Of a DNA stretch of 64,000 nucleotides, positions 5,393 through 49,649 are shown in pieces. Both the position numbers and the translations under genes were made by a program. Source of the DNA: Ylistrum balloti (taxonomy: Eukaryota); NCBI RefSeq assembly GCF_031769215.1, contig NW_026782356.1, positions 1,488,001 to 1,552,000 on the forward strand. The letters are read 5' to 3'. The first letter of the stretch is position 1, and each line of letters starts with the position of its first letter. The notes under the pieces are model-generated. The model was not told the origin of the DNA. It was given only the letters and a program-made list of their open reading frames with translations, and did no database searches.

Positions 5393-6498
5393 ATGGAGTT
5401 GCCTTCTTTGTTTATGCTGGTTTTGTTGTGTAGGATAGAATTATGCACAGGAGAAAATAAGGATGGATATGACGAATTAATTACTGTCGCGGACATGAAG
5501 AAGTTCATGGTGGAGACTTCAGCTTCTCTTCGTTATTACCAACAGAAGACAGAGTCTTTACAAAATATTGTAACAAAACAGGAACGTGAAATACAGGTCC
5601 TGAAAACAGACCTCTCGAGACTGACATCGGGAAAATGTGACGACATGAGAAATATTGATAAAGGAGGTAAGAGGTACACAACATGACACACACGTATATA
5701 TATAAATAGATAATTATTGATTCTTGATGGGACTTTCTGACTCAAAATCACGGGACGATATGTACCAGAATGTGCTGCGGTACAGAATATGTTTGCTATA
5801 TGTGTTTAATATATCTCTTTAATAATAGTTATTTCAATCGAACTCCGCTGTTTCATATAATGACGTTTAAACTACTCATTGACTGGGAAACAAACAAAAT
5901 AAATTCATACCATTATGAACTTAAAAACATCTTGTTTATAAATTATCACTACCTACCGAGTTGGTGAACTATCAGTCCTTACATTCATTCTCTGAAGCGT
6001 GGATATTTTGATTATATACTGCGTATCGAATACACCTTTGTTCATCATTGCTGTTCTCACTTTAAAGGTATCAAACGAGTTGCAGAGTTGAATAATCAAA
6101 CTGTGGGTGTTGCGTTCTACGCCCAGCTATCCACCGACCAGTCCACTTTTGGTACTCACCAGACCGTCATATTTGACCAAGTACGGACCAACATCGGGAA
6201 TGCCTTTAACCACGATGATGGAGTGTTCACGGCGCCATCTGCCGGAGTATATGTTTTCTTCTGGACAACAACAAATCGAGATAGAACACACATGCAGACG
6301 GAGCTGGTTATCAATGGGGTACAGTATGGAAGAGCATGGGCCGACTCGGGGAATCATGATGACGTTTCAATGGCTTCTAATACAGTGGTCGTATCGCTTG
6401 TGCAAGGGGACACCGTTTGGATCCGATCTGATACTATACATTCCGGTTTCACAAATGGACAGAACTTTGCAACGTTCTCTGGCTGGTTGTTACATTAA
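5393..6498 (+). CDS. Secreted C1q domain-containing protein (signal peptide, short coiled coil, gC1q), 2 coding exons, 234 aa
   Basis: Exons 5393-5666 (GAG|GTAAGA) and 6068-6498 (TTTAAAG|GT), with matching phase 1. Hydrophobic N-terminus MELPSLFMLVLLCRIELC; heptad segment LQNIVTKQEREIQVLKTDL; gC1q motifs VAFYAQL, VIFDQVRTNIGNAFNHDDGVFTAPSAGVYVFFW, LVQGDTVWI, TFSGWLL. AATAAA follows the stop. Confidence 0.95.
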
Positions 6499-9755: not shown

Positions 9756-12700
9756 CTATGGAGTACCAGCGCCTCTCATTGGTAACGCCACCTTGCAAAA
9801 GGATATTTGAATCTGCAAATAGGAGAGTATTTATGTGTGTGTACAAAAAGACATATACACATTAGAAACAAAAATGATCTTATTTGCATGATGATTCATA
9901 AATTTAAATAGCTACAACTGCAGACCAAATGTGGCGTATTTTCAAGAATTATTTTCAATACAGAATTGACTCCCGTTTAAAACATGTTAAGTATTATGCA
10001 AACAATAGAAAAAAACGTATTTTAAGACGTATTGATAAATTTGAATTTGTCGTAAGACAACTTACCTCATCAATGAAAGCATAGAGTCCATCGACGAAAT
10101 CTGTACAAGACCCAATCCTCAACGGGCCAACACTGGTCATCATGTTTCCTGTAAAACAACTCGGACTTTCAAATGTAACCTTCATTTTAAACATTATTCG
10201 AAGTGGGTCATCGAATTCATTAAACTTGGTTAAACAGATTGTCATTAATTCTTGTTCCGCTTCATCATTACTTTACTATTTAGCATCGCATAATATTGTT
10301 TATTTTATGAAGAGATAGTTCATAGGACATAAAAGTGAATAACTCCGAAGGAATAAGGCATTGATTTGTAAATGACGCTTAGGACAATCATTGTTGAAAC
10401 TACAAATCATATATTTTCATGGGACACAGATTTCGTAATTTCGGACAAGATAAAGTGCGGACGGACGGAGGGACGGACTGAAACAATGGGGAATCGCGAG
10501 ACATTCCTGATATATGTCAAAATATACTTAGTCCACTTGGTAGTGAGTTGACACCAGAGTTGAGGACGCTTTACCTGAGAAAGCCACTTTTCCTTTATCC
10601 TCCTGAACTTTTCCTGTACCCTTGTTGATATGTTGCAACGTCCCGTGTAGGAATGACCCGTCAAATCGGAACAGCACGTTGGTCCATTCTTGGATCTGGA
10701 AGAATCAGACCATACCGCGATTAACTATAGATTTTGGCAAATAATAAATATTTAACAGAGACAACGGGAAGCTGTTGTGTTTCATTGTTCTTACATTTTC
10801 TTATCAATTGCCCAATAAAAGAATTTATTTTTTGACAACAACGGCAAATCATAAATTTTGCAAAGGACTTACTTTTATCGGAAGAGCTAAAGTTGTGACA
10901 GTATTATCATTGTTTACTATTCGGATGTGGATGCCGGACCCTGAAGTCGTCCTATTGATGTAAATTTCGAGTGAAGATGCATCCGGATATCTCGAAGTAT
11001 CTCTATCGCAATTTGTCAGCAATATTTGTTTGGACGGTCCCTGTGCCATTACGTAAATCCTAATTTGGATTCCAAACTTCCGGGAAAGATTATCATTTCC
11101 ACTGTAAAAAGGAATGGTAACAGAACTGTTTCCCCGGAACTGACCGTAACCTTTGATCTTATCGATTGATTTTGTGTATATCCACACCGGGGATTCGGCT
11201 TCGTTTTTCACTATCTTGCTCTTAATATCATTGAAGGTAATATGAACTTCCAACTGACACACTGGAAACAGGAAAAAATGATTGTGAAAACACAAACTAC
11301 GAGAGAAATGAGATAGTATTTATACGCGTCTTCTCCAATGCTCTTTTGACACAGTTGAAGAATACATATGGTCATCGGCAACCGTGAAACGTCAAAACAA
11401 GTAAACTTTCACGTTTTTGAAGACTTCACGCTAGAAGCTGGAATATATGTTTCTTGTAAATCATTCTAGACACATTATCATTTCGATTCTTTTGTAAAAT
11501 CATTGCAAAAACTGCGGCGCGTTAACGTTAGAAATTATCAAATTTTATCTGCTTTATTATGGTAGACTTTTGGTGCTGAATTTGTATTTTCCACTTACGA
11601 CTTAACTAGATTCCAAGAAAAAAGCAAAATGTTTAAACGAAGTGAATACATTTAACCTTATTTAATTGTTACTTACATGGTGCAACACTTCCAGATCGTA
11701 CGCACGTGCATAGCTCGGCATCAAATCTGGTGCCGTGACCACACTTTTGTATCTCGGCGACGTTTGCCTCGTTGTAGAACGTCTTGCCATCCTTGCTTTT
11801 AAGGTTACACCCTGGCAATAATGATTTAAATTCTTTCATTAAAAGTATAATACTTCCCCGTAATGTATTGATGTGGACTTAATTGTTTTATTCTGAACCT
11901 GTATAGAGTTTATGACGACTAATTGTAATAATTGTTGCACCTAATTGATAGCCCTCGTGGTTGGTTAAGTGGTAATTACACAATGCAAATGTGCATATAT
12001 TCTTAATATATAACTTTTACAAAAAAAGGAAAAAACATCATTTTCAATACATGAGAATGAAACCTAACATGATCCACTGGACAGGAGGTAACAATGAAAT
12101 GATGAGATAAGGCATCAACTAATGCATAACAAAAGCTGCTGCAAAAGTATAAATACTTTTAAATATTGATTTAATTTAATGTTCCTAGATCAAGATAAAA
12201 AGGTTTGCAAGTTTAACCTTACCTGGTTTACAAGTGTATTCGACCTGCAAATATTTATCTATTCCTGGACAGGGATCAGTATAGAGAGAGGGGTCAGCTG
12301 TCACAGAACAGGATTGCTTTCCTGCACATTGGCTTCTTAGTGCTGTGAGAGCGGACCGCGTGGAGCACGGTTTAGTGACGGGTGGAGACGGGCCGCAGGT
12401 TTTAGCATTAACACGCCCATAAAACACTTCATTGATGCGAACTTCCATACGAAGGGGACATTTTAGCGTCTTGACATTACCGTTACACACTGTCACTTGA
12501 CTGTCTGTATCTGTAAGTTTAACTTCAGATTATTACAATTTGTATTGACAAATTATATCTGCTGTATGATTATGAGAATAAAGCGATGAAGTATATGTGA
12601 AGTCAACCAGCAGACTTGATAGTGTGTATTGATTGCGTGCCTGAATGCAATAGTAGATACGAGATGTTAGTATGATATCATGTCCTTATTCCTAATGGAT

Positions 12701-14265
12701 AAAGGCACTTAACTAAACATGTATGTCTATTATCATTCCTTCACATAGAAACAAAATTAGCTAAGCATTCCATTTTCTGGAAGGTCTAAGAGTCCGTACA
12801 TACCAGACTGTATTGCTTAACTGTAACACAAATCAGCTAAAAATCATATAAATTGAAAAAGTCCATACCTTTATCAACCTGAGTATCTTGATTTCTTGGA
12901 CAGGAAGCATTACATGCTTTATCCTTTACGCATGCGCCGTCTTTTCCGCTGTAGGCAGTCCCTTCCGGACAACATTCTGCAGCAGAATAATTGCCGTTAC
13001 ACCTCCAGTAGTAGCGACAGTTGGGCTCCTTGATCCTGAAGTCTTGGTACGACACCAGATTGGGATATCGGGGATCAGAGCACGGATCTGTAAGAAAACA
13101 TAACAGCTGAATAATGTAGCCATTGCTGATTTTGGTCACTTCCATTTTTGGTTTTCTTTTTCGAGCGGAGTTAGCGAAAAATACTGGTAAATTATATAAA
13201 GGTCTTGTTTACAATTTAAAAAAAAGTATTGTCATGATAATGCAAATTTCAAACACTGGACAAAAAAAGATAAAATAACCGGATGAGATAGAAAAATGTT
13301 ATGTAAATGTGTAGCCCTTGTAAATACTGAACGCAATATACCGCTCGGCTAGAGAGAACATTTCTTTAGCTCGATCGGTTGAGTGTCAGACTAGTAAGCC
13401 AGAGATAACGAGTTCGAATATCTGCGGAGGCATTATAATAAATGGTGACTTCTGTTTCAATTGACCAAACATTTTTTTCTGTGTTGGTTGGTATCTGTAG
13501 AGTTAGATACTAAATCATAGCGAGTTTACACGTGACGCTCGTCCACATTGTGCTCTGGTCCTGTAGATCTACTACATTGTGCACTGGCTAAAAGTAAATC
13601 AGGTACCACAGGCTGAGACCTGACCACTCCAATGTGTAAGTAAAGCCTTGTATAGTGATAACGACAAAATAGGACTACCGTCGAGGTGACCAATGAGGAA
13701 GCAGTTGAAGGTGTTATTTCTTTTACAGATGGACTCTTTTTCCTTTATATTCTTTTCATTTGGAGACAAAGTAAATGTCATAATGCGTTTAATCATTTGA
13801 TATATATTAAAGAGATCACTGAAAGGGAGCCGTGTACAGCTAGGCTCTTTTTCATGACGAATGTCATCTTCGCGGGCCAAGAGTGTTCAGTGCGATAGGA
13901 AATGATTGTAAGCCCTGGTTGATAGAGGATGGGGAATTGTTAACAATGCCAACCATTACGATAGTTCATCATACAATAGATACCTTAGACATACTTATTG
14001 TGGTGTCTAACACACAGTTATTAAATATATAACACATACACATCAAAATCAAGTAAACAGCAAGTAACAACCACCTCACCTCTTGCGCATTTGATGATAG
14101 AGGGGAAATCACATCGGTTTTCTTTCTCGTTGTAGAAGGTTCCGAACGGACACCTGAGTTGTGTTGGTTGTCGTCCGGACTCGCAAACAACATACGCGCC
14201 ACAGTCGTTTGGAATACCAAGTGTACACACAACAGACTTACAACTGCTACATAAAGCCTTCAGAC
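9756..14265 (-). CDS. Pif/BMSP-like chitin-binding protein: CBM14 (ChtBD2) x2, SUEL/Gal-lectin domain, partial CBM14, LamG/ConA-like domain; 5' exons not resolved
   Basis: GT-AG exons with consistent phases: 14265-14080, 13087-12869, 12510-12223, 11811-11677, 11261-10873, 10695-10575, 10148-10066, 9812-9756 (TAG). Total 1478 nt, about 492 codons. CBM14: CGAYVVC...CPFGTFYNEKENRCDFPSIIKC and CRYYWRC...CCPEGTAY. SUEL: CNGNVKTLKCP...EVFYGR...CAGKQSCSV...DPCPGIDKYLQVEYTC. LamG-like: EWTNVLFRFDG, PLRIGSC, AFIDEIQISFC. Confidence 0.9.
13361..13432 (+). mobile_element. tRNA-derived SINE head or tRNA pseudogene (Thr-AGT-like loop)
   Basis: A-box-like TAGCTCGATCGG, loop CTAGTAA, B-box-like GAGTTCGAAT. 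The stems do not pair well, so it is not a functional tRNA. It is intronic in the Pif-like gene. Confidence 0.6.
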
Positions 14266-15199: not shown

Positions 15200-17745
15200 T
15201 TCAAGCAGTTGATACTTCTGATGAGACGGAGTAGATTACCTGTCAGGAGGCAAACCACAGTACTGGAGATCTGTTTGCTGATGAATCACCTCACAGCGAT
15301 GGCCCTGGTTGGAGTGGGGATGATGGAGCCCAGGAAACAGAAGCCACGGAGACTATAACACTACGGAAAGCGAGGGTCAACTGGCCCAGAATGTCATATG
15401 GGAAGGAATGGAAGGCATTTTATGAAGAGTATTAGAGATAACGATGCAGGGAAGTGTTGATGACAAGAAGCTATATATCCTTGTAACCAGAATACACGAA
15501 AGACGCAGCAGAGAGAGAATAAAAGGGAAAGGGAAATTAGAAGCATATGGAGAGAAAAACCCTGAAACGCAGATTGCGAACAGCATCACAGGAAGAAGGT
15601 ACCACCAGAGACAAACGTAAGAAACTAAGAAAGGCTGAGAGAATACGAGCTGGTAGTAAGACAAGGACGCAGTTTATCAAGGATCTTTTGCTAAAATAAA
15701 AGTTGGAAGAAGACCGTTCAGGTCAGCTGGAAAGCTCCAGGATAGAGATAGAACACCATTGTGAGCTAGACAAGGCTACACCGCTGGGAGACTGTCCTGT
15801 GGTAATAGAAGATCAACCACCAAGTACTCTTGAGGCAGAAAGTACAGGAAGTGGTGAGGTAAGAAGCGCTGTAGTATATTCACGATCAGCACTTGGTCCA
15901 AGTGGACTGCCACATTCTGTTCAGAAATGCCCAAGGGTGTTGCGACGGCTGTGGATGCTCCTGATGAAGATGTGGAAGACAGGAACGATTCCCGACATTT
16001 GGAAGAAGGCAAAAGGTTGATTGGCCCGACATAGGACTCGACATCTGTGGAGCAGTTCAGAATTATCCCCTTGCTCAGTATCGAATGTAGATCTTCACTG
16101 TGATGGCTACGCGGCAAACACATCAGCTCAGAAGGAAGCAACACATGGGTTCCTTGAATGCGTAGAGCACACTAGCGTTCAGAGCCAGACGATTCGCGAG
16201 GATAAAGCGATTTGGCAGTGGTTTGGTTTGACATAGCCAATGCATATTGAAGAATCCCTCCCAAGCTCATTTAGGGAGCGATGCAATGTTATCTCATTCC
16301 AGAACATGTCATCAGCGTGAAGAAGTGTAACGTATGCTGTTCGGGATTGTTGCACCACACGAGGAGACTATTCTATTTACATTTTTGTTACAATATTTAA
16401 AAAGACTTTACCCTGCATTTACTTACAGATACCTCACACACCGATCATTTTACCTCACACACAACTATCCCTTACGCACATGTAGATATGAAATATGAAT
16501 ATGTATGACCGCACTATAAAATGTCACTGTGAGGCCACCGAAGCTCTTCACACAATGTCGCAGTCAACTGATATTCCAGTATGATTCCTCGGCTCCATGC
16601 TTGTCGACGAAATAACTGGTCATTTATTACGTCATAAGTCACTCAACATGGTGCGGCACCCAGGATGTAACGAACTATGATCTTCGCAACGATCACTGTC
16701 CCACACGTAGTGTTCATTTCATGTACAACAAAAGAAACATCATATAGAACGGAAACTCTACGTCAGCTGTGATGTTCCCAAGAAGAAGTGTAAATACTGT
16801 GACGTCATATCACTACACTGTACGCTATATATGCTGATGGTAGACAGCTCAGGTTCACCACAAATAGCTTCACCAAAGCCTTTCAGGATTTAAGAAGGGA
16901 ATAGTGACAGGTTGGTCTTGTCGCCTATCCTGTTTGTGATGGGTATGAACATCAACATAAAAGCTGTTGAAAGAGAGACTGGAGGGCAAAGAATGAACGC
17001 AAGAATCTACCAACCTTCGAATAGATGATTCATGGATTACAACAACAACCCATGTTCGAGCACGGTGGATACTATATGCACCTGATGGTGTCGTGGGCTC
17101 GGAAGAAGTTTGAGCCGAAGAAACACGGTGTATGATCATCAGGAAGAGGCGGTTGACAAATCCCTGTAAAATGCTAAGGGAATAGGTATGACGGCACCCT
17201 GTTGGAGGTTGGAGAGAATGTAGAAGAATGGCTGAATAGGATTGATAAATCAGAACTGCTCAAGATGATGTTCTTCCTAGGTTATCTTGGACCCTTATGC
17301 TGTACGAATTACCACTGACAGCGGTTAAACCCCTTATGACAGCAGGAAGCTTTGATCGTGGCCTGGAGTTCCTACAAGTCGTAGAGGTATGACTATACAA
17401 CAAGGTCACAGGGACAGGCAGGAAATGGTCAACTGGTGTGGTGTGCAGAAAGCAAATCCAAGATACACTGGAGCTCCAGGACATTGTAGGAAACAGCTTT
17501 GTTGGCAGACGAAGACTGAGAGTCGATTGTCAGACATATGGAGAATGGAACTAAATACCAGGAGTTAGCAGAGCAATGCAGACAGAGGGATGGAACACCT
17601 GGCTGTTCCCAGTAGAGGTAGGTACCAGAGGGTTCCCTGCACAGTCAGTATGGAAATGGATCCAGAAAGTGGAACTGACAGGCGAAAGGCAGCTATTAAG
17701 ACCATAGCCAAGAAGGCTGGTTATGGTGCAGACGAGATGGGCCAA
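15200..17745 (+). mobile_element. Degraded R2-superfamily (HERO-like) non-LTR retrotransposon: RT plus restriction-like endonuclease remnants, interrupted at ~16340-16829
   Basis: Fragments RKARVNWP, SRSALGPSGLP...CPRVLRRLW...IPDIWKKAKG, QFRIIPLLS, CVEHTSV, VWFDIANAY.RIPPKLI, QLRFTTNSFT, KGIVTG...LSPILFVMGMN and TKYQELAEQC...GWNTWLFPVEVGTRGFPAQSVW match the HERO-type RT/RLE layout from memory. Many stops and frameshifts; 5' boundary approximate. Confidence 0.85.
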
Positions 17746-18915
17746 AATGTCAAATATATTAAATATTTCTCATTGTTTTCGGATAGGATTTTGCGGAATG
17801 CAGCAGTAAAAGCCAATAGATTTGCAGAATATCGTGGATGTCAGTTTACAAATGACCTCCAATCGGGAACTGATATTTCTTCCCAGACCAAGCATGGTAC
17901 ATAATGAAAAAGCCCACCACAAATTAATATTAGACTGACATTTACAAATATTTGCATATATGTTATTACTTAATGGCAATACCTACTCCCCAATCCCTGG
18001 TTCTGTCGGGCAACATCCCCCGGGGGTGGGTCCACAACTGTTAGAACTGTCAAAAAAGAAGGAACAGCATGCTGCAGTGTACACGGGATTGTGAAGCAAT
18101 ATGTGCATGCATGTGAATCAGGGAAATAGGTATAGTAGTACTAGTAATTGATTATCTGATTCGAGATGGTATGGTGGTAGGAATTTCATATGTGTAAGGA
18201 AATATATAGTGCAACTGTATCACACAACCGCAAGGGTCTTTCAAAACTAGCAGGGTCAAACAAATCCAGTTCGATAAATAACTTAAATATGGTATAATAG
18301 AAATATAGTCACACAGGAATCATTGCCAGTGTACATCAGTTCATAAAAGCTTAAAAACAAATAGAATCAGCTATTATGAGGAAAATAGTTTTTTTATATA
18401 CAAATTTATTAAAATTATTTCTATTGTGAGTATTTGGACATACTTTTAAATGATTGCACAGTGCGCGGCGTAGTAGGAATTTAAAACAACTTGCCTTAGT
18501 ATAAAAAATTCAAACCCGCACATTTTTAATACATGATGTAAACAAGAGAATGCACATAATTAGCTATTTAACAGGTTAAAGTCGATGGGGCATTTAGATG
18601 TTTACTTTACCGGAGATGATTAATATCGCTTACAGACTTACCTCCCCCTGTCGACAGAGTTTCCTGAGATAAAATACACCAACAACACGCGGACAACAAT
18701 AATAAATGGATTTCTGTGGTCAGCTTCATCTATGATATAAAGTAATAATAAGTTAATAGTTATTATTGTGATTTAATGGTTATTTGGTTTCAATATTGAA
18801 GTAATCATCGATGATTACTGAAACGTTCATAATGAGGATTGAAATCTTAACAGAAATAGCAGACAAAAACAAATCGAAATGCCAAACAGCAATAAAAAAA
18901 CACACAAACAAAAAC

Positions 18916-31966: not shown

Positions 31967-34243
31967 TTACATGTATCTGATTTCATAGAACGAGATTTTG
32001 CCCTTGTAGTGGGCCACTGCAAGGATTTTCTGGTCGTTACTAACACTGATGGTATACTGCACCTCGTGACCACCTAGTCGTTCCCTTTTAATATCTCCAT
32101 GCACAACCTTGCGTGCATGACCTGAATAAGATGTTATAAACACATTGCCGGATGAAGCGTCTAGTATGAGAATACTTTTCAGTACAGGCAGTAAAGCGAT
32201 TCCTTGTGGATCTTTTAGTGAATCATGCCCATAACGCCGCACAACTTCAGGAGAGTTTTTGCTATTTTTTATGTCATAGACCTCCACTTCATTTTTACGC
32301 ACATCACAAAACACAAGAAATGTGGTTGTAGACATAAGAAGACTCCTCGGAACTGTCATTGAGAACATAAGGTCAATTTTCTGTACGATATCTCCACGCA
32401 TAGTTAAAATATCAATCCTTGCAGCAGAGAATGGTGGTCCTCTTCCACAAATGAGTCTGTCTTTGTCTCTACAGTAACCTATACTAATGTACTTTCCAGT
32501 TTCCATCACAAACTCTAGCTTAGCTGGTGTTTCACCAGGTGTATCTGCAAAGGATACAAAGAGTATATCACCTTCTTCCGGAGCAGTCACAACACAGAGA
32601 GTGTCTGATATACCAGCGACATCCCATGGCTCCGATGCACAGTAGAATTGGTCAACTAAGGAACCAAACCCATCACTTCTGAAGCGTTTAAGGCACTTGT
32701 TTTTTTTGTCTGCCACGACAAAGAATTCTCCTAAAGACACAATGCCCATCAAGGAAGGATTAAACTCGTCTTTGTCTGTTACTGTATCAATCTTTGTTAG
32801 ATACTTAAACATGGTGACCGTTTGTGCATTTAGAGGAATTGGTGTAAAAGTGGATTCCTGTGGGGAATCAAATGGTTCAGACGATGCACTCAGGGACAGC
32901 GGGGGCGCAGATGGTTGCACAGTGGAGCGACCGTCAGCAGAAGGGTAATGGACTTGTGTGGAGGGACTATAATGAAGACGGGAAGAGGGTCCAGGCATAT
33001 CATCAAGGGCCGACAATGGTGGGGCAGATGCTGAAGGCTGGCGTCGAATAACCGATGAGTTCAAAGGACGCCGTCTTTGTATGAAGGATTGTCGAGCTAC
33101 ACTATTATAAGTCGGTGGTGGTTCCTCAGGTGGAAGGGGGGGCGACATTTCTTCATGTTGTGTGGTCATTAACGAAGACCTATCAGGAGTTGACAATGCA
33201 GAATCCAGTTCGGCGCGTACCTGCTGGTCAACAACAGCATCTTCCTGGAAAGTAACAGCACAAGCATCCATATGACAGCAATCAACAATTTCGATCTTCA
33301 CGATGTCCGTGTCGGCCAATTTGTCCTCCAACTCTGTGTTGACAATGAATCGTACATTATATTCTGTGTCGATATCTGATTGTAGTTGTGAAAACATCGT
33401 TTTAAATCTTTCCAAATTTTTCCTTAAATGGTTCGTTACAACTAAATTTTGCGGTGCATGTGTAGTAATTTGTTTTTGTACAGCAAGTGCAAGTTCCTGT
33501 TGTAATTTTACAGATGACGCCATCTTATCACAAACCACAGCGTCGCGCTCTAAGTATGCTATCTCATTCTCTCGAAGTTCTTTTGCTTTCTCTAGTACTT
33601 TCCTCTCTTGCTCTGCCAGGTACTGAACAACTTTTTCTCGTAATTCTGAATAATACAACTTGATTGTTTCATCATGTGTTGCAGGGTCAGGGACGATGTT
33701 TCCTATTTTTGTGTTAAGAATGTTGTGTAATTCTTCAGTTTCAGACAGAAAGTTAGTTAGTTGTTCTGCGACTTCCTTGCTATTGTTGAATGCTTTCATA
33801 TGCATACCCTTGTCAATCTTGTGTAGCTCACAACGTACATGCATCTCTCGTCTGCATTTATGGCAAGCAAGCATGTTGCAATTCACACAGAAGTAATCGT
33901 ACATATATTCATCGTGAAGATTACATGATACTGGAATCATATTATTCACACTATACATCGCTTCAGGTTCTTCGCCATTTTTGAAAAACTGCTGGACATC
34001 CTTCATAAGAGTATCTTCCTCTAGTATCAGTAATGTATCCTGTGAAACAACCGATTCTTGTTCCTCGGGCAAATGTTTATATCCGCATACTGGACAAGGA
34101 AACGAAGCTTTGCCATAGAATTCAGTGATGTAAAGTACCAAACATTCATGGCAAAAAACGTGCTGACATCTGAGTTTCTTCGGGTAGGTAATAGGTTCAT
34201 CACAAATCCTACATCGGTAAAATTCCTTGAGTACCTCTTCCAT
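31967..34243 (-). CDS. TRIM-family E3 ligase, 758 aa, intronless CDS: RING (C3HC4), B-box2, coiled coil, Pro-rich linker with PPTY and PSAP, beta-propeller (NHL-like)
   Basis: RING CRIC-x11-CQHVFCHEC-x15-CPVC; B-box CNLH...FCVNCNMLACHKC...H; helical region; C-terminal repeats LMGIVSLGEFFVVADKKNKCLKRF, EPWDVAGI, DPQGIALL. An acceptor at 34321-34322 indicates a 5'-UTR intron. Confidence 0.95.
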   Translation of the reverse strand: MEEVLKEFYRCRICDEPITYPKKLRCQHVFCHECLVLYITEFYGKASFPCPVCGYKHLPEEQESVVSQDTLLILEEDTLMKDVQQFFKNGEEPEAMYSVNNMIPVSCNLHDEYMYDYFCVNCNMLACHKCRREMHVRCELHKIDKGMHMKAFNNSKEVAEQLTNFLSETEELHNILNTKIGNIVPDPATHDETIKLYYSELREKVVQYLAEQERKVLEKAKELRENEIAYLERDAVVCDKMASSVKLQQELALAVQKQITTHAPQNLVVTNHLRKNLERFKTMFSQLQSDIDTEYNVRFIVNTELEDKLADTDIVKIEIVDCCHMDACAVTFQEDAVVDQQVRAELDSALSTPDRSSLMTTQHEEMSPPLPPEEPPPTYNSVARQSFIQRRRPLNSSVIRRQPSASAPPLSALDDMPGPSSRLHYSPSTQVHYPSADGRSTVQPSAPPLSLSASSEPFDSPQESTFTPIPLNAQTVTMFKYLTKIDTVTDKDEFNPSLMGIVSLGEFFVVADKKNKCLKRFRSDGFGSLVDQFYCASEPWDVAGISDTLCVVTAPEEGDILFVSFADTPGETPAKLEFVMETGKYISIGYCRDKDRLICGRGPPFSAARIDILTMRGDIVQKIDLMFSMTVPRSLLMSTTTFLVFCDVRKNEVEVYDIKNSKNSPEVVRRYGHDSLKDPQGIALLPVLKSILILDASSGNVFITSYSGHARKVVHGDIKRERLGGHEVQYTISVSNDQKILAVAHYKGKISFYEIRYM

Positions 34244-36267
34244 GTTGTAGGAGTTAAATCAAGTAGCTCTGAGCCTTTCGTTTTATATGGTCATTTCCCC
34301 CATGTCTATATTTATGACATCTGTAAAATAAAAGAGTAAATCTAATAAGAATTTTGACTACATCATTTTACATTGTACAAAAGGAATTTATCATGATAGT
34401 TTCCAATACCGTCAGGCTGAAAAAGGACTATATTTAAATGTTAGTTTTAATACAAAAGTATAATAAATTAAATAGAACTTTTACCAAAGTACACTGAGTG
34501 CAATCTTTCGATGAAAAAAGTAATAGATGCATGTCGACTTATTTAAACAAGTGATCACATCAAGAAATTGTTTTTTTCTTGGTCTATTTATTCCCAAGAA
34601 ATAGCATTTATAAAATGTTAAAATTCATATCTATGATGGTCAACTTGCAGCTATTTCTTCCCAGTCTCAAAGTTAACAGATTGAGAAATATCCTCCAGTA
34701 CTTCTCTAGAAATAGCAATAACAGAGACTGTTTGGTGTATATATGAACAATGTACTTAGTACTCCGGCTGGTATCAGATGTCACAAGACCTTAAAAGTCA
34801 TATACTTTTTGTAACAACTACTTGGCATTTTGTGTACACAAAACATTCCATATTTGCATTTTTTTTTAAATGTCTGAGGTTTTTATTTCTTTTTGTCTTC
34901 CAGTAATGCCAAGTTCACACATACTTTATGACAACAATACCAAAACACATCAGTTGATTTATAAAACTAAATTAACATTTATTCTAAAATGGTTTTCTTA
35001 ATTTAACAAAAGTGTCCAGGCATTTGTACTATTTCACTGATCTGTTTTAACATTAATTTTTAATAATGATAATAAATAAACCTTTTATCTATCCAGGGCT
35101 ACATATTTAGGCATGTCCAATTTACAATATGGCCCTGCAGTAACATATATACAGATATCACAGTAAGCTTTCAGATACATATTATATAAAAAAAATAACA
35201 TATGAAGTTTAAGATTCAGTAAACCTACAATACATAGAAGATGAAAATATCACATATGAATTTATACTTACTAAGATATATAATGACCTATACACTTCTA
35301 ATCAAAGTAGCATAATACATCAGATATATTTGGTACAAATCTAAAAAAATTTTGGGGGAAAAATCCTTGACATATTTATGTTTCAAAGCAATTACACTAT
35401 CAGCAATTTTCTAATATTTTCACTTATAAGATTTATCAAAACTGAACATTAAAAATAGTTAGTTCTAGCTGAAGGAATATACAATTTTATTTGTTGGAAA
35501 CAGAAGACCTACTATTGAACTAAAGGTAAAATTTCAACTATATCTTCCAATATTTGATATAAAATATTAAATCAAAACTGCCATTCAAGACACGTTTTGT
35601 CAGAATGACAATTACAAATGACAGGTAATGATGGTATTCCTTATAAAATCTATAATATGGAATTATCATAGAATCTCAGTTTTATGTACAACTTATATTA
35701 TTTATTTGTACACATGCATTAAATCCTAAAATCTTTGTGTTGTGACATTCAAAGAAAGCAAACTGTCATCTGAATGAAGCATGGATAATATCTTATTCAA
35801 TGATGCAACCCCTTCACACAATGTATACAGTAGAATGACAATACAAACGTTGTTCATACAAAGCAATAAAACGAATCCTGAAAAACACTTGTAAAAGAAA
35901 GATATACCCTCACATACACACGGTAAACAACACCAAAATGAATTGAGGGTCATTATATTCATACACAACACTAAAACCAGAGATGTACATAACACATATA
36001 TATGTTTCTGCTAAAACAAATCATGAAAATCAATTGAACAAGAAATAATAATACATGTACCAATAACATTCATTACAGTGTTTTATTATACAACAAACTG
36101 GACATACAAGTCTCTACAATATGTGTAGATCGAAACAACTGCCTATAGGAAAGCGGAGGTCAAAGCTATGTTGGTCATGATGCAATAATTTAAGAATTCA
36201 CAGAGTACAGCAGAACAGATATTAGATCAATAATTTACAACAAAATATATAGATGATTTAATAATAC

Positions 36268-46448: not shown

Positions 46449-48695
46449 CTAGACCTGGGTAACAGATGGGAGATAGGAATACTCTATATCATAGAGTGAC
46501 ACAAATCCATCAGCACTGGTTACTGCTAGAGTCGTCCCGTCCATACTCGTGCACATTTGAGTGTCTATTTCAGCCGATCCTTCCACCGAAATCTGATTAG
46601 GAAGGACCTTTACAAGTTGTCCTGAAAATGATGCTACTGTAAGATCTCCATTTCTGCTGTCTAAAATTAGAAGCAAATCCATTTCATCAACTATGGCAAT
46701 GCCTTGTTGTTTTGAAAAACTCAATGCAGCATGCCCAACAAAAGTCTTCTTATTAATATGGTTTGTATCACTGGATTTGAAGAATATTACCTTTGATTTA
46801 TCAAGGTCACTAAGTATTAGATCAAAAGGTTTTGTCACAACAATGTTACGTGGGCTTTGGCAATAATCTACAGGAATCTTTCTCCTAACGCGTCCTTGTA
46901 AGTCAATCACATCAATTCTTGTGGAACAAAATGGTGGACATAAGCAACCAATTAAAAGCTCTGTCTCTTTATGAAAGGCTATGTAAGCATACTGACCCGT
47001 TGTTAGAGCCTTGCGAACACTGATTTCCTCACCTTGTTTCAAAGCTGGATCACGGAGGAAAAGCAACTGTTTTTGTTTTGGAGCAGTGACAACGCATTCG
47101 ACATCAGATACAGCAGCAACATCCCAAGGTTCCACATATCCAAAATCATGGACATTCAACAACCCTCCATGTTGACTGAGAACTTTCATGCAATAGTTCG
47201 ACCGGTCGAGTACAACAAATGTGTCACCAACAGTTGCTATAGCTACTAGAGAAGGGATATTAATGTCCCCAGAAAGCTGGATATCAATGTAGTCCTTGTA
47301 CTGTAACCTTGCGATCCCATCTTTGACATGTGGATCAACTGCGGACTCTGCATTGTTAGCCAATGATCTGTCGGATACAATATTGCTGTGGTCAATAGTA
47401 GATTCAGAAGATCCTGTAGAGTGATAATAATGGCTGCCAGGACCACTCCTTAGTTCAGATTCTGGAAGTGGTGGAGCTGATGGCTGTGTGAGAGTAGTGG
47501 AAGGGAGATTCATGTTTTGTGGTAATGTCATAGGTGGAGCTGTAGGAAGAGGGCGCTGGCCAGAAGATGGACAATTTATTTCCAGGGAGGGCTGTTGTAA
47601 TACACATTCATATGTAGGTAGGCCTTCTTCATCTTCACCTAGTAAACCTGACTCTGATATGCCATCTTCTCCAGGAGAATCAGGATTTTCATTGTCTTCA
47701 AAGGTCACAATATAGGGTCCTGAGTGGCAGCTGTCAATCACTTCAATATTAACAATGTCTACGTTTGTCATTTTGTCCTCAAGTTCTGTATTAATCATAA
47801 ATCTCAAGTCAAATGACTTCATCAAATCGGACTCTAAATCAGGTAAAATATCTGTAAATGATCCCATAATCTTGGACAAATCTCCTGCAAGAATCATGTT
47901 CTGTGATGGTTTTATTGACGTCTGAAGCAGCAAAGCTATGATTAGTTTCTGATGAGCATCTAAAGAAGTAAGCAGTGAAGAACATACAGAGATGTCATCA
48001 TCTAGGTACATTTTCTCTTTTTCTTCTAATTCTTTTGCCTTTTTCAATATTTTATCTTCTTGTTGTTCCAGATAGTGAATAACATTTTCCTTCAAATCTG
48101 CATAATATGCCTTCACTGTTGATTCCGTATTTTCTCGGTCAGGGATGGCATGTTCTAGTTTTGATACCAATTTTCCATGAAGCAACTGAGTACGTGACTT
48201 AACCGTCTCTATGTCTGTCGAAATTTGCCGCATCCTGTTGTAGCAACTGGTTTCCATGGTTTTTGTGATGGTCTCGAGATGACATCCTCGATGCATGTTT
48301 ACTCTACACCGAGGACATACGAGTACGTTGCATGCCTCACAATAATACGAGCAACGGTTCCTTGGATGAATGGAACACAATGGAGACAATACACCATTTG
48401 ACGATTGGATAGCAGGTCGTTCATTTTCGTCACTGTAAAATTGGCGTAAGTTTCTTGTCAGGGAATCCTCTTCTAAGGCTGACAGCATAGTGTCACTCAC
48501 TTCTGTTTCTGGTTCCTGTGGTGTATGCTTATACTTGCAAACAGGACAGTGGAATAATGTCTGACCGAAGTATTCACTGATATAGCCAATCAAACATTCA
48601 TGGCAGAAGATATGCTGGCACTTTAGCTTTTTGGGATAACTTACAGACTCGTGGCATATACCACACTGGCATAAAGATTGAAGTATCACATCCAT
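46449..48695 (-). CDS. TRIM-family E3 ligase paralogue, 748 aa, intronless CDS: RING, B-box2, coiled coil, linker with LPTY, PTAP and PSAP, beta-propeller
   Basis: The first in-frame ATG is at 48695 (MDVILQSLCQCGIC...). The track's TTG start adds 16 aa after an in-frame TAA. RING CGIC...CQHIFCHEC...CPVC; B-box CSIH...YCEACNVLVCPRC...H; propeller IPSLVAIATVGDTFVVLDRSNYCMKV, EPWDVAAV, QQGIAIV. Acceptor at 48801-48802. Confidence 0.95.
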   Translation of the reverse strand: MDVILQSLCQCGICHESVSYPKKLKCQHIFCHECLIGYISEYFGQTLFHCPVCKYKHTPQEPETEVSDTMLSALEEDSLTRNLRQFYSDENERPAIQSSNGVLSPLCSIHPRNRCSYYCEACNVLVCPRCRVNMHRGCHLETITKTMETSCYNRMRQISTDIETVKSRTQLLHGKLVSKLEHAIPDRENTESTVKAYYADLKENVIHYLEQQEDKILKKAKELEEKEKMYLDDDISVCSSLLTSLDAHQKLIIALLLQTSIKPSQNMILAGDLSKIMGSFTDILPDLESDLMKSFDLRFMINTELEDKMTNVDIVNIEVIDSCHSGPYIVTFEDNENPDSPGEDGISESGLLGEDEEGLPTYECVLQQPSLEINCPSSGQRPLPTAPPMTLPQNMNLPSTTLTQPSAPPLPESELRSGPGSHYYHSTGSSESTIDHSNIVSDRSLANNAESAVDPHVKDGIARLQYKDYIDIQLSGDINIPSLVAIATVGDTFVVLDRSNYCMKVLSQHGGLLNVHDFGYVEPWDVAAVSDVECVVTAPKQKQLLFLRDPALKQGEEISVRKALTTGQYAYIAFHKETELLIGCLCPPFCSTRIDVIDLQGRVRRKIPVDYCQSPRNIVVTKPFDLILSDLDKSKVIFFKSSDTNHINKKTFVGHAALSFSKQQGIAIVDEMDLLLILDSRNGDLTVASFSGQLVKVLPNQISVEGSAEIDTQMCTSMDGTTLAVTSADGFVSLYDIEYSYLPSVTQV

Positions 48696-49649
48696 ATTGG
48701 TTCTATTATATCCTTTTTTCCTTATTCTGTTGTTTTGAATCAATGAAACTTTTTATAGCTTGGTTCCGATCCATGCAGCGTGTTGTTGTCTTCATTCATT
48801 CTGAAATGCAAAAATAATTTAGTAAACATTTACAGTGGTGAATGATTGTGGTTTAATTGGTACATATTTAATTATTACAATGTAGATGTTGCGATGTATG
48901 TATATATATATTTCAATTCATTTATAGAAGGACTGAAAATGTTAGCAATTACTAGATTACGTGCTGTTGATTTTTATGTCTACACATTAAGACATGCCTA
49001 ACTATACCGTAAGTGTAGAGCATGCTGTAAATGAGACTATTTCTTGTACATGTTCATGTAACCAGTTTTGAACATCCAAATACTTTAATACAAAAGAGCA
49101 ATTTTGTATAAGGCTTTATACCAGAACTACAATACAACAATGCAGACTAAAATATGGTAGACCTATCACCAAACAATCATAATTTAATCTTAACATTATG
49201 CCTTTATCAACAAAACATAACTCCTACTTTTATTATTTTCTTTATTCACGATGAGAAAAAACATATTTTTTTCCATGTCATACACGTACATGCTATGTAT
49301 AATTTCTCGTTGGATTTCTATTCTGTTCCTTTTCTGTTCAAAATACATCAAATGATTATTTTAGAAACAGAAATTTTCGGTCTATGTAATATGTCTATGT
49401 AATGCATATAGTTTTTAATTTAAATAATGAAATGTTAACATAATGACAACAAATGTTGATTTTTTTTCTCGCGAGTGTAGTTTACAACATTTGGAAGAAA
49501 AAAAATCAAATATTTATAAAAATGAGAACACAAAATGACCAATTCACAATAACTGATGAAGACATGTGTAAATTATAACACGTCTTCATCAGTTCTTGTG
49601 AATTGGTCATTTTGAGCTCTTAATCTTTTAAAAGCATTTAATGACTTAC

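What the first reader, a model, noticed from the sequence alone, without database searches (positions are those of the whole stretch)
9756..14265. Pif/BMSP-like chitin-binding LamG protein with an embedded SUEL (rhamnose/galactose-binding) lectin domain
Seen: spliced architecture CBM14-CBM14-SUEL-partial CBM14-LamG/ConA. Established: the molluscan shell-matrix proteins Pif97 and BMSP combine VWA, peritrophin-A chitin-binding and ConA/LamG-like domains; SUEL (Gal_Lectin, PF02140) domains bind L-rhamnose or D-galactose. Inference: a SUEL domain inside the chitin-binding array is not an arrangement I recognise. It would give a secreted protein able to bridge chitin and galactosylated or rhamnosylated glycans, either in shell organic-matrix assembly or in trapping microbes on chitinous or mucosal surfaces. 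No VWA exon was found in the window.
Basis: partly seen in the sequence, partly recalled or inferred. Interest (0 to 1): 0.7.

Follow-up and report, generated by a model that had tools for sequence, protein, structure and literature searches.

The report
Scallop Pif-like protein with lectin insert
This is a real, already annotated but unstudied scallop gene for a secreted chitin-binding protein of the Pif shell-matrix family that has gained a lectin-type module, and that module has lost two of its three usual sugar-contact residues.

Summary
A 10-exon minus-strand gene (window 18729-9756) encodes a 541-aa protein: signal peptide, linker, CBM14, CBM14, SUEL lectin, a short CB-like module, and a C-terminal ConA/LamG-like jelly roll. 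The jelly roll is seen only by fold. There is no VWA domain.

It is RefSeq XP_060076784.1 (LOC132556394, Ylistrum balloti, "uncharacterized protein"). Orthologues at 84-88% identity exist in Argopecten, Pecten and Mizuhopecten. A second SUEL-bearing paralogue and a SUEL-less "protein PIF-like" paralogue lie on the same contig.

The SUEL exon is phase 1-1. It sits where the SUEL-less paralogue has a single phase-1 intron. Its splice sites are kept in two other genera, and its dN/dS is about 0.1. It is therefore a true coding exon.

The gene belongs to the published "LamG3" class of Pif homologues (CB + LG, no VWA). The SUEL insert looks undescribed and was found only in scallops.

Of the Glu/Asn/Asp sugar triad of SUL-I, this protein has Asn/Pro/Asp. 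Nineteen of 19 other SUEL exons in this genome keep the Glu.

Tissue, shell presence and ligand are untested, because no RNA runs were available. Verdict: a lineage-restricted domain-shuffle variant of a known family, of moderate interest.

The parts
18642..18729 (-). Exon 1: start codon at 18729, hydrophobic signal-peptide-like N-terminus, ends in phase 1
   Evidence: Exact match to P0001 residues 1-29; GT donor
17987..18046 (-). Exon 2: acidic Pro-rich linker, phase 1-1; absent from both paralogue groups
   Evidence: Exact match to P0001 residues 31-49; AG/GT; alignment A1
14080..14265 (-). Exon 3: first peritrophin-A chitin-binding module (CBM14a), phase 1-1
   Evidence: Pfam CBM_14 E 3.2e-8; dN/dS 0.01-0.04
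12869..13087 (-). Exon 4: second peritrophin-A module (CBM14b), phase 1-1
   Evidence: Pfam CBM_14 E 6.1e-5; dN/dS 0.03-0.06
12223..12510 (-). Exon 5: SUEL / rhamnose-binding-lectin-type module, phase 1-1. It has 8 Cys and keeps the YGR, DPC and KYL motifs, but the sugar triad reads Asn194/Pro258/Asp263
   Evidence: Pfam SUEL_Lectin E 4.1e-20; PDB 5h4s E 5e-41; dN/dS 0.08-0.11 and conserved splice sites; triad comparison
11677..11811 (-). Exon 6: CB-like (half-CBM14) 4-Cys module, phase 1-1; the most conserved part of the protein
   Evidence: Pfam CBM_14 E 0.036; hhalign P 0.0026; dN/dS 0.01-0.02
10873..11261 (-). Exon 7: first and largest part of the ConA/LamG-like jelly-roll domain
   Evidence: Fold search; only 5 clusters hit among 1.84 billion representatives
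10575..10695 (-). Exon 8: LG domain, part 2
   Evidence: Exact match to P0001 residues 456-495; conserved in paralogues
10066..10148 (-). Exon 9: LG domain, part 3
   Evidence: Exact match to P0001 residues 497-523
9756..9812 (-). Exon 10: end of the LG domain and TAG stop (9758-9756)
   Evidence: Exact match to P0001 residues 524-541

Best explanation
The locus is an intact scallop gene under purifying selection (LOC132556394, Ylistrum balloti). It encodes a secreted, basic (pI about 8.5), cysteine-rich extracellular matrix protein of the Pif family, in the VWA-less 'LamG3' class.

Shown here:
- The gene model and its domain order: signal-like N-terminus, linker, CBM14, CBM14, SUEL, CB-like, ConA/LamG-like jelly roll.
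- Conservation of the gene in four pectinid genera, and two further paralogue groups clustered with it.
- The SUEL module is one symmetric phase-1 exon. It lies exactly where the SUEL-less paralogue has a single phase-1 intron. This is the signature of exon shuffling, although gain followed by loss cannot be told from other orders of events.

Inferred mechanism:
- The two peritrophin-A modules anchor the protein to chitin.
- The strongly conserved CB-like + LG core does what it does in other Pif/LamG3 proteins, namely engage other matrix components or mineral.
- The SUEL module adds one more binding surface. Its canonical sugar pocket is remodelled (Glu to Asn, Asn to Pro or Lys) yet the domain stays under constraint. 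So it most likely recognises something other than classical L-rhamnose/D-galactose: either a different glycan or a protein partner, as latrophilin's SUEL-type domain does with teneurin (that example is from my own knowledge, not a tool result).

The most likely site of action is the mantle-secreted chitinous shell matrix, but this is not shown.
For: Gene model:
- Each exon peptide is an exact substring of P0001, all splice sites are AG/GT, and the CDS is 1626 nt.
- Domain calls.

Orthologues and paralogues:
- Identified.
- Exon-by-exon colinearity with two paralogues on the same contig, one with and one without SUEL.

Selection:
- dN/dS is 0.04-0.06 over the whole CDS and 0.08-0.11 over the SUEL exon, with dS above 1.
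- Splice sites of the SUEL exon are conserved in Mizuhopecten and Pecten.
- The 3 CDS differences in a second individual are all synonymous, against 34 non-coding ones.

Exon shuffling:
- The SUEL-less paralogue has a phase-1 intron at the same spot.

Pif kinship:
- The family HMM hits the CBM14, CB-like and LG exons of a gene on C218 that also carries a VWA domain (Pfam E 2.5e-29) and a poly-Thr linker.
- The LamG3 class is defined in PMC10543319.

Remodelled pocket.

Shell lead: a 'Gal-lectin' protein is among the 46 Pecten maximus shell-matrix proteins (PMC5854119).
Against: - There is no expression or proteomic evidence for this gene. No RNA run was available, and the only run found is DNA.
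- The identity of the Pecten shell 'Gal-lectin' could not be checked, because no supplement is held.
- The protein is basic. It has no acidic low-complexity insert and no furin-type site, unlike Pif80. A direct mineral-binding role like Pif80's is therefore not supported.
- PMC10543319 notes that many Pif/LamG3 genes are not mantle-enriched.
- The residue mapping of the sugar triad rests on sequence alignment in a loop that is known to vary. A neighbouring Asp257 might substitute for the missing Asn.
Confidence: 0.5

Rival explanations
1. It is a humoral or mucosal pattern-recognition lectin rather than a shell-matrix protein. The CBM14 modules would bind chitin of fungi, parasites or a gut or gill lining, and the SUEL module would bind microbial glycans, so the protein agglutinates or traps microbes.
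For: - SUEL-type lectins of bivalves agglutinate bacteria and bind LPS (text of PMC8878817; the GYL-R abstract in PMC10817417).
- Lectins found in shell proteomes were themselves read as immune components (PMC5854119).
- The window also holds a C1q-domain exon and two RING/B-box ORFs, which belong to families often tied to immunity. This is weak, because it rests on mere proximity.
Against: - The nearest relatives are Pif-like/LamG3 proteins, not free lectins.
- Two of the three canonical sugar-contact residues are replaced, and the invariant Glu is lost only in this lineage.
- There is a single lectin module, so the protein has no multivalency of its own for agglutination.
Confidence: 0.25
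2. The SUEL module still works as a classical galactoside/rhamnoside binder, and bridges chitin to galactosylated matrix glycoproteins. The Asn and a neighbouring Asp would stand in for the missing Glu and Asn.
For: - The fold-defining features are intact: 8 Cys and the YGR, DPC and KYL motifs.
- Asp263 is kept, and Asn194 can still form hydrogen bonds.
- The domain is under purifying selection.
- UniProt's automatic name is 'D-galactoside-specific lectin'.
Against: - Glu is kept in 19 of 19 other SUEL exons of this genome and in all PDB relatives aligned.
- The Asn71 position is Pro in three orthologues and Lys in one, so it is not even conserved.
- The sister SUEL-bearing paralogue has lost YGR, DPC and KYL as well.
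Confidence: 0.2
3. The architecture is a gene-model artefact. The SUEL exon would belong to another transcript, or would normally be skipped, which is possible because skipping it keeps the reading frame.
For: - No RNA evidence could be obtained.
- The exon is 288 nt and phase 1-1, so skipping it would be in frame.
- All the supporting protein records are computational predictions.
Against: - No other SUEL-type exon or partner exon lies nearby. The exon is unique in the genome; the next best match has 39% identity.
- The position, phase and splice sites are the same in Pecten and Mizuhopecten and in the paralogue.
- dN/dS is about 0.1 with saturated dS.
- No isoform lacking the exon is among the proteins returned.
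Confidence: 0.04

Closest known systems
LamG3 proteins (Pif homologues with CB and LG domains but no VWA; Bai et al. 2023, BMC Biol, PMC10543319)
   Same: Signal peptide, peritrophin-A chitin-binding modules followed by a ConA/LamG-like domain, and no VWA. These genes arose by duplication and domain loss or gain, and they occur in clusters with Pif genes.
   Different: None is described with a SUEL lectin module. The oyster LamG3 proteins shown to be shell-matrix proteins belong to an Ostreidae-specific clade. The LG1 exon of the scallop family found no oyster protein at E 0.001 or better.
Pif (Pinctada fucata Pif97/Pif80) and BMSP (Mytilus); Pif/BMSP family as classified in PMC11291548
   Same: CB modules, then a CB-like module, then an LG domain, in the same order. 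The family profile recognises the core of a canonical VWA-bearing Pif-like gene of the same genome.
   Different: - No VWA domain.
- The LG domain is uninterrupted, whereas Pif/BMSP have partial LG sequences around low-complexity acidic or basic inserts.
- No furin-type cleavage site, and the protein is basic.
- It carries a SUEL insert.
PifCCP subfamily / oyster Pif-e (Pif with Sushi/SCR repeats gained by domain shuffling; PMC11291548, PMC10543319)
   Same: A Pif-family protein that acquired a foreign extracellular binding module by shuffling.
   Different: [quoted passage not shown] Here it is SUEL, placed between CB2 and the CB-like module.
Rhamnose-binding (SUEL-type) lectins SUL-I (PDB 5h4s) and CSL3 (2zx0)
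   Same: The same domain family: E 5e-41 and 6.6e-21 respectively, four-disulfide pattern, and the YGR, DPC and KYL motifs.
   Different: Those are free lectins made of 2-3 tandem SUEL domains, each with a Glu/Asn/Asp sugar triad. Here there is a single embedded domain that reads Asn/Pro/Asp.
Lectin (RBL) domain of latrophilins/ADGRL (PDB 2jx9, 5afb)
   Same: A single SUEL-type domain embedded in a multidomain extracellular protein (E about 1e-11).
   Different: That is a membrane receptor context. Its use as a protein-binding (teneurin) surface is from my own knowledge and was not tested here.

Membership tests
Pif/BMSP family (VWA + CB + LG shell matrix proteins) | N-terminal von Willebrand factor A domain(s) | tested here: not met
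   Pfam scan of the complete 541-aa protein gives only SUEL_Lectin and CBM_14. The CDS starts with a signal-like peptide. In the same genome, the gene on C218 does carry VWA (E 2.5e-29).
Pif/BMSP family (VWA + CB + LG shell matrix proteins) | Peritrophin-A (CBM_14) chitin-binding modules followed by a CB-like module | tested here: met
   Two CBM_14 hits lie above Pfam's gathering score. The CB-like module is weak (E 0.036; hhalign P 0.0026) but invariant in position across the family.
Pif/BMSP family (VWA + CB + LG shell matrix proteins) | LG (ConA-like) domain downstream of the CB modules, homologous to that of Pif | tested here: met
   The fold is a ConA/LamG jelly roll. The family profile hits the LG exon of the VWA-bearing Pif-like gene at C218 (E 2.5e-11 and 1.3e-11).
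Pif/BMSP family (VWA + CB + LG shell matrix proteins) | Charged low-complexity insert in the LG region and proteolytic split (Pif97/Pif80) | tested here: not met
   The LG domain is uninterrupted. No R-x-K/R-R motif is present. D+E is 9.4% and pI is 8.5.
Pif/BMSP family (VWA + CB + LG shell matrix proteins) | Presence in the shell matrix / mantle expression | not testable with these tools
   No RNA run was available. The shell 'Gal-lectin' of Pecten maximus (PMC5854119) could not be identified, because no supplement is held.
LamG3 class (PMC10543319) | CB and LG domains together, without VWA | tested here: met
   the class definition was read.
LamG3 class (PMC10543319) | Shared origin with Pif genes (clade or cluster membership) | tested here: inconclusive
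   In the LG1-exon tree the three scallop orthogroups form one clade (96/96), apart from the canonical Pif-like and other CB-LG genes of the genome. No oyster LamG3 sequence was available for comparison.
SUEL / rhamnose-binding lectin domain (PF02140) | Domain profile match over the full length | tested here: met
   E 4.1e-20, 72.4 bits against a cut-off of 31.4, profile positions 1-80 of 80.
SUEL / rhamnose-binding lectin domain (PF02140) | Eight cysteines and the YGR, DPC and KYL motifs | tested here: met
   Seen directly in the exon peptide and in the alignments to 5h4s, 9vwi and 2zx0.
SUEL / rhamnose-binding lectin domain (PF02140) | Sugar-contact triad Glu/Asn/Asp (SUL-I Glu7, Asn71, Asp76) | tested here: not met
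   The aligned residues are Asn194, Pro258 and Asp263. The orthologues read N / P or K / D. Other SUEL exons of the genome keep Glu in 19 of 19, Asn in 15 of 20 and Asp in 20 of 20.
SUEL / rhamnose-binding lectin domain (PF02140) | Binding of L-rhamnose or D-galactosides | not testable with these tools
   This needs recombinant protein.
Laminin G (Pfam Laminin_G_1/2/3) | Sequence-profile match | tested here: not met
   No Pfam family at E up to 10 for the C-terminal 211-232 aa of three family members.
ConA-like lectin/glucanase (LamG-like jelly roll) fold | Two-sheet jelly-roll sandwich that superposes on solved members | tested here: met
   Z is 17.4 against the lectin-like N-terminal subdomains of clostridial NTNH/Hc proteins (fold only, 8-14% identity). 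Z is 14.2 for collagen IX NC4, 12.2 for the thrombospondin-1 N-terminal domain and 12.1 for laminin LG5 and perlecan LG3. Foldseek gives E 5e-8.

The most novel reading that the evidence does not exclude
The embedded SUEL module is a remodelled, non-canonical binding domain, with its invariant Glu replaced in every member of this lineage. It would recruit a specific partner, either an unusual glycan or a protein, to the chitin scaffold. Under this reading it is a pectinid-specific innovation of the Pif/LamG3 toolkit, tied to scallop shell microstructure (foliated calcite). It would also be an example of a lectin fold being converted into a matrix cross-linker.
Probability: 0.2. Interest if true: 0.55.

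Novelty: new variant of a known kind. Interest (0 to 1): 0.36.

Why it matters
Shell-matrix proteins are a textbook case of rapid evolution by domain shuffling. This locus gives a clean example at exon level: one phase-1 lectin exon lies inside an intron of the conserved Pif core. A SUEL-less sister gene and a degenerating SUEL-bearing sister gene lie in the same cluster, and the arrangement is kept across scallop genera whose divergence is put at more than 100 million years (time range from the supplement of PMC10543319).

If the protein is in the shell, it may be the unexplained 'Gal-lectin' of the Pecten shell proteome. That would move the protein from 'immune contaminant' to a member of the Pif toolkit.

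The loss of the otherwise invariant Glu in a domain that remains constrained also offers a simple test of how far SUEL folds can drift from sugar binding.

The gene is nevertheless already annotated, the family is known, and such shuffles are expected in it, so the surprise is moderate.

Tried and rejected
- **RNA evidence.** The search for RNA runs found none. The only holder, X1, proved to be genomic DNA of another individual: its contigs are colinear through the introns and show no joints. Splicing could therefore not be checked directly.
- **LG domain by sequence.** Pfam gave nothing on single exons or on the whole C-terminus. The protein-atlas feature search gave only hints.
- **Relatives outside scallops.**
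  - HMMER of the LG1 exon against 1.84 billion representatives returned 5 clusters: three scallop groups and two short metagenome or Logan fragments.
  - Three word-index searches (whole protein, family alignment, residues 112-330) returned only the family.
  - These searches cannot exclude distant CBM14 + SUEL combinations elsewhere. The word index is insensitive, and a proper InterPro architecture query was not possible.
- **Literature.** Accession numbers of the orthologues occur in no searchable paper. The supplement of the Pecten shell proteome is not held. The gene lists of PMC10543319 are not in the stored supplements.
- **Relic of a SUEL exon in the SUEL-less paralogue.** None was found in its intron (best E 0.45). 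The LG1 tree leaves the order of the three orthogroups unresolved. So a single gain followed by loss cannot be told from gain after the first duplication.
- **Toxin relationship.** The top fold hits are the lectin-like subdomains of clostridial neurotoxin complexes. This is a shared ConA-like fold at 8-14% identity. Collagen, thrombospondin, laminin and sialidase CBM40 domains come close behind, so there is no sign of toxin kinship.
- **Joined exons.** A joined spliced translation was never built or sent to any tool. Exons were searched one by one by reference, and the full-length work used the database protein P0001 by its id.
Full report
**What is there**

The region is eukaryotic, AT-rich and intron-bearing. 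On the minus strand I defined ten exons with AG/GT boundaries:

| Exon | Coordinates | Content |
|---|---|---|
| 1 | 18729-18642 | start codon, signal-like N-terminus |
| 2 | 18046-17987 | linker |
| 3 | 14265-14080 | CBM14a |
| 4 | 13087-12869 | CBM14b |
| 5 | 12510-12223 | SUEL |
| 6 | 11811-11677 | CB-like |
| 7 | 11261-10873 | LG part 1 |
| 8 | 10695-10575 | LG part 2 |
| 9 | 10148-10066 | LG part 3 |
| 10 | 9812-9756 | LG end, TAG stop |

The total is 1626 nt, or 541 codons plus the stop.

Each exon was searched by reference. An HMMER search with exon 7 returned a database protein of 541 aa, P0001. Every exon peptide is an exact substring of it, in order, with one split-codon residue between neighbours. 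All full-length work used P0001 by id.

**Domains**

- Pfam on single exons: CBM_14 E 3.2e-8, CBM_14 E 6.1e-5, SUEL_Lectin E 4.1e-20 covering the whole profile, and for exon 6 only E 0.036 to the C-terminal half of CBM_14.
- A profile comparison of the exon 6 module with the family's CBM14a gave P 0.0026 over the C-x-G-T-x-F...C stretch. 'Partial CBM14' is therefore plausible but weak. The Pif literature knows such modules as 'CB-like' (PMC11291548).
- The C-terminal 218 aa match no Pfam family, even at E 10.
- An AlphaFold2 model built on a 10-sequence alignment (pLDDT 75, pTM 0.78, all-beta) superposes on ConA-like jelly rolls:
  - Foldseek E about 5e-8.
  - VIA-align Z 17.4 down to 11, including collagen IX NC4 (14.2), the thrombospondin-1 N-domain (12.2), laminin alpha2 LG5 and perlecan LG3 (12.1), neurexins and pentraxins.
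  - ESM-Atlas matches of TM 0.64-0.77, mostly clusters carrying Laminin_G_3.
- The highest Z values are to the lectin-like subdomain of clostridial NTNH/Hc proteins. This is a fold resemblance at 8-14% identity and nothing more.
- The whole protein has no VWA domain.

**Identity and relatives**

P0001 is XP_060076784.1, 'uncharacterized protein LOC132556394' of the scallop Ylistrum balloti. The window is G000:C499:1488001-1552000.

| Species | Accession | Length | Identity |
|---|---|---|---|
| Argopecten irradians | XP_069110628.1 | 542 aa | 88% |
| Pecten maximus | XP_033762395.1 | 540 aa | 86% |
| Mizuhopecten yessoensis | XP_021363907.1 / OWF45391.1 | 541 aa | 84% |

UniProt names the Mizuhopecten protein 'D-galactoside-specific lectin'.

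On the same contig lie two paralogues with colinear exons:

- One at about C499:1.657-1.666 Mb has a SUEL exon. Its Pecten orthologue is XP_033762970.1, 516 aa.
- One at about C499:1.592-1.599 Mb has none. It and its orthologues (423-428 aa) are named 'protein PIF-like'.

Among 1.84 billion representative proteins, exon 7 hit only these three groups and two short fragments. Three word-index searches added nothing.

**Is the SUEL exon really part of the gene?**

No RNA run was on offer, and the one run that holds the locus is DNA. The case therefore rests on evolution:

1. Exons 2 to 6 are all phase 1-1, so the SUEL exon fits the frame.
2. The same exon, in the same place and with the same AG...GTAAG sites, is present in Mizuhopecten and Pecten.
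3. dN/dS of the SUEL exon is 0.11 and 0.08, with dS above 1. This compares with 0.06 and 0.04 for the whole CDS.
4. In a second individual, the three differences that fall in coding sequence are all synonymous. The other 34 fall outside it.
5. The exon has no close copy elsewhere in the genome; the next best match has 39% identity.
6. The SUEL-less paralogue has one phase-1 intron exactly where the other two genes have intron-SUEL exon-intron. That intron holds no relic of a SUEL exon.

This is the pattern expected of exon shuffling into a phase-1 intron. A tree of the LG1 exon groups the three orthogroups together (96/96) but does not order them. One gain followed by loss in the PIF-like line cannot be told from a later gain.

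**Place in the Pif family**

A profile of the family finds further CBM14 / CB-like / LG exon sets in the genome, on C113, C190 and C218.

The C218 gene carries, upstream of these exons, a VWA domain (Pfam E 2.5e-29) and a poly-Thr linker. That is the canonical Pif layout described in PMC11291548. In that gene CBM14b and the CB-like module share one open stretch. The ancestral state therefore had them adjacent.

Bai et al. 2023 (PMC10543319) define 'LamG3' proteins as Pif homologues with CB and LG domains but no VWA. They show that such genes arose repeatedly by domain loss, sit in clusters with Pif genes, and include shell-matrix proteins in oysters. The window gene fits that class.

Neither that paper nor PMC11291548 mentions a lectin insert. 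They do describe gain of Sushi/SCR repeats by shuffling.

Unlike Pif80, the LG domain here is uninterrupted and there is no R-x-K/R-R site. The protein is also basic (pI 8.5). The SUEL-less paralogues are acidic, at pI 5.6-5.9.

**The lectin module**

It is a good SUEL domain by sequence:

- E 5e-41 to the three-domain lectin SUL-I (5h4s).
- E 6.6e-21 to 5.5e-22 to CSL3 and CSL2.
- E about 1e-11 to latrophilin lectin domains.
- Eight cysteines and the YGR, DPC and KYL motifs are present.

In SUL-I, rhamnose is held by Glu7, Asn71 and Asp76 (PMC10377782, figure 4 legend). In the gap-free alignment to SUL-I domain 1 these positions are Asn194, Pro258 and Asp263 of the scallop protein. Alignments to CSL3 give the same mapping.

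- The four orthologues read N / P, K, P, P / D.
- The SUEL-bearing paralogue reads R / gap / D and has also lost YGR, DPC and KYL.
- Of 20 other SUEL exons fetched from the same genome, Glu is kept in 19 of the 19 that cover the position, Asn in 15 of 20 and Asp in 20 of 20.

The canonical pocket is therefore altered specifically in the Pif-embedded lineage, while the domain stays under purifying selection. It points to an altered ligand. It does not prove loss of sugar binding, because the Asn71 position lies in a variable loop and an Asp precedes the Pro.

**Function**

- Shown: a conserved, secreted-type, multidomain protein with two bona fide chitin-binding modules, a constrained SUEL fold and a Pif-type CB-like + LG core.
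- Inferred: it anchors to chitin through the CBM14 pair and links it to other matrix components through the LG core and the SUEL surface.
- Site of action: I favour the mantle-secreted shell matrix. The reasons are the family kinship and the fact that a 'Gal-lectin' protein is among the 46 shell-matrix proteins of Pecten maximus (PMC5854119). That protein's identity could not be checked. The same literature also notes that many Pif/LamG3 genes are not mantle-specific.
- An immune or mucosal lectin role remains a real rival.

**Novelty and verdict**

The gene and its architecture are already in RefSeq for four scallops, but they are uncharacterised. The class (LamG3/Pif) is known, and domain shuffling in it is known.

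What appears new is the SUEL insert, its restriction to scallops as far as these searches reach, and its remodelled sugar triad. I rate it a new variant of a known kind, of moderate interest.

Two earlier notes of this scan concern the same genome. They record other SUEL and reduced four-cysteine peritrophin-like architectures elsewhere in it. They are context only and were not tested here.

Noticed in passing
G000:C499 about 1657500-1666300 (+) (L001/L003) and about 1592000-1598700 (+) (L002/L004): Two paralogues of the window gene lie on the same contig, 45-110 kb beyond the window. One has a SUEL exon whose YGR, DPC and KYL motifs have decayed (YGG, DRC/DHC, KQV). The other has none and is named 'protein PIF-like'. 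In Pecten maximus the orthologues of the two SUEL-bearing genes lie about 23.6 Mb apart on one chromosome (LR736852.1), so the cluster has been broken or was built differently there.
   Followed up: partly
G000:C218:163001-183000 (L011, L012), minus strand: The canonical Pif-like gene of this genome. It has a VWA domain (L012:1953-2567, Pfam E 2.5e-29), a poly-Thr linker (L012:1574-1807), CBM14 (L012:59-337), CBM14 + CB-like in one open stretch (L011:8254-8670) and an LG exon (L011:7564-8013).
   Followed up: partly
G000:C113:249001-289000 (L005-L008), plus strand: Three tandem LG-type exons lie at about 258.9, 278.4 and 287.8 kb. The first gene has CBM14 exons preceded by a 1164-aa open stretch rich in Ser, Thr and Asn (L005:3873-7364) with no Pfam hit. 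This looks like a mucin-type N-terminus in place of VWA.
   Followed up: no
window 5968-6495 (+): An open stretch encoding a complete C1q domain (Pfam E 1.4e-24). It is probably the last exon of a C1q-domain-containing gene just downstream of the Pif-like gene, on the other strand.
   Followed up: no
window 31970-34258 (-) and 46452-48752 (-): Two long uninterrupted ORFs (763 and 767 aa) with an N-terminal RING finger and B-box (Pfam E about 1e-5). They look like intronless TRIM-like paralogues 14 kb apart. The C-terminal 600 aa have no Pfam hit.
   Followed up: no
window 13354-13406 (intron between CBM14a and CBM14b exons): A short element with very high word depth in the DNA run X1 (about 1200, against 11 for the flanks), and many contigs ending in it. 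The loose ends carry tRNA-like GGTTCGAATCC motifs, which suggests a SINE-type repeat.
   Followed up: no
window 57800-59400: A block of tandem repeats with strong GC skew (0.53). It is open in several frames on both strands, with repeating units such as '[15 protein letters not shown]'. There is no convincing Pfam hit.
   Followed up: no
window 15700-17800 (intron 2 of the gene): A GC-richer stretch (0.44, against about 0.35 for the window). It has several 100-130-aa open stretches on both strands with no Pfam hit, and may be an old mobile element.
   Followed up: no
P0001 vs P0008/P0003/P0007: The SUEL-bearing proteins are basic (pI 8.0-8.8). The SUEL-less PIF-like paralogues are acidic (pI 5.6-5.9) and carry a Gln/Thr/Pro-rich linker where the SUEL module would be.
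   Followed up: partly
L015 (ENA metagenome scaffold, 3538 bp): A host-derived scaffold in a metagenome carries a CBM14b-like exon directly followed by LG exons of this subfamily, with no SUEL exon between them. It groups with the scallop clade in the LG1 tree. The source organism is unknown.
   Followed up: partly
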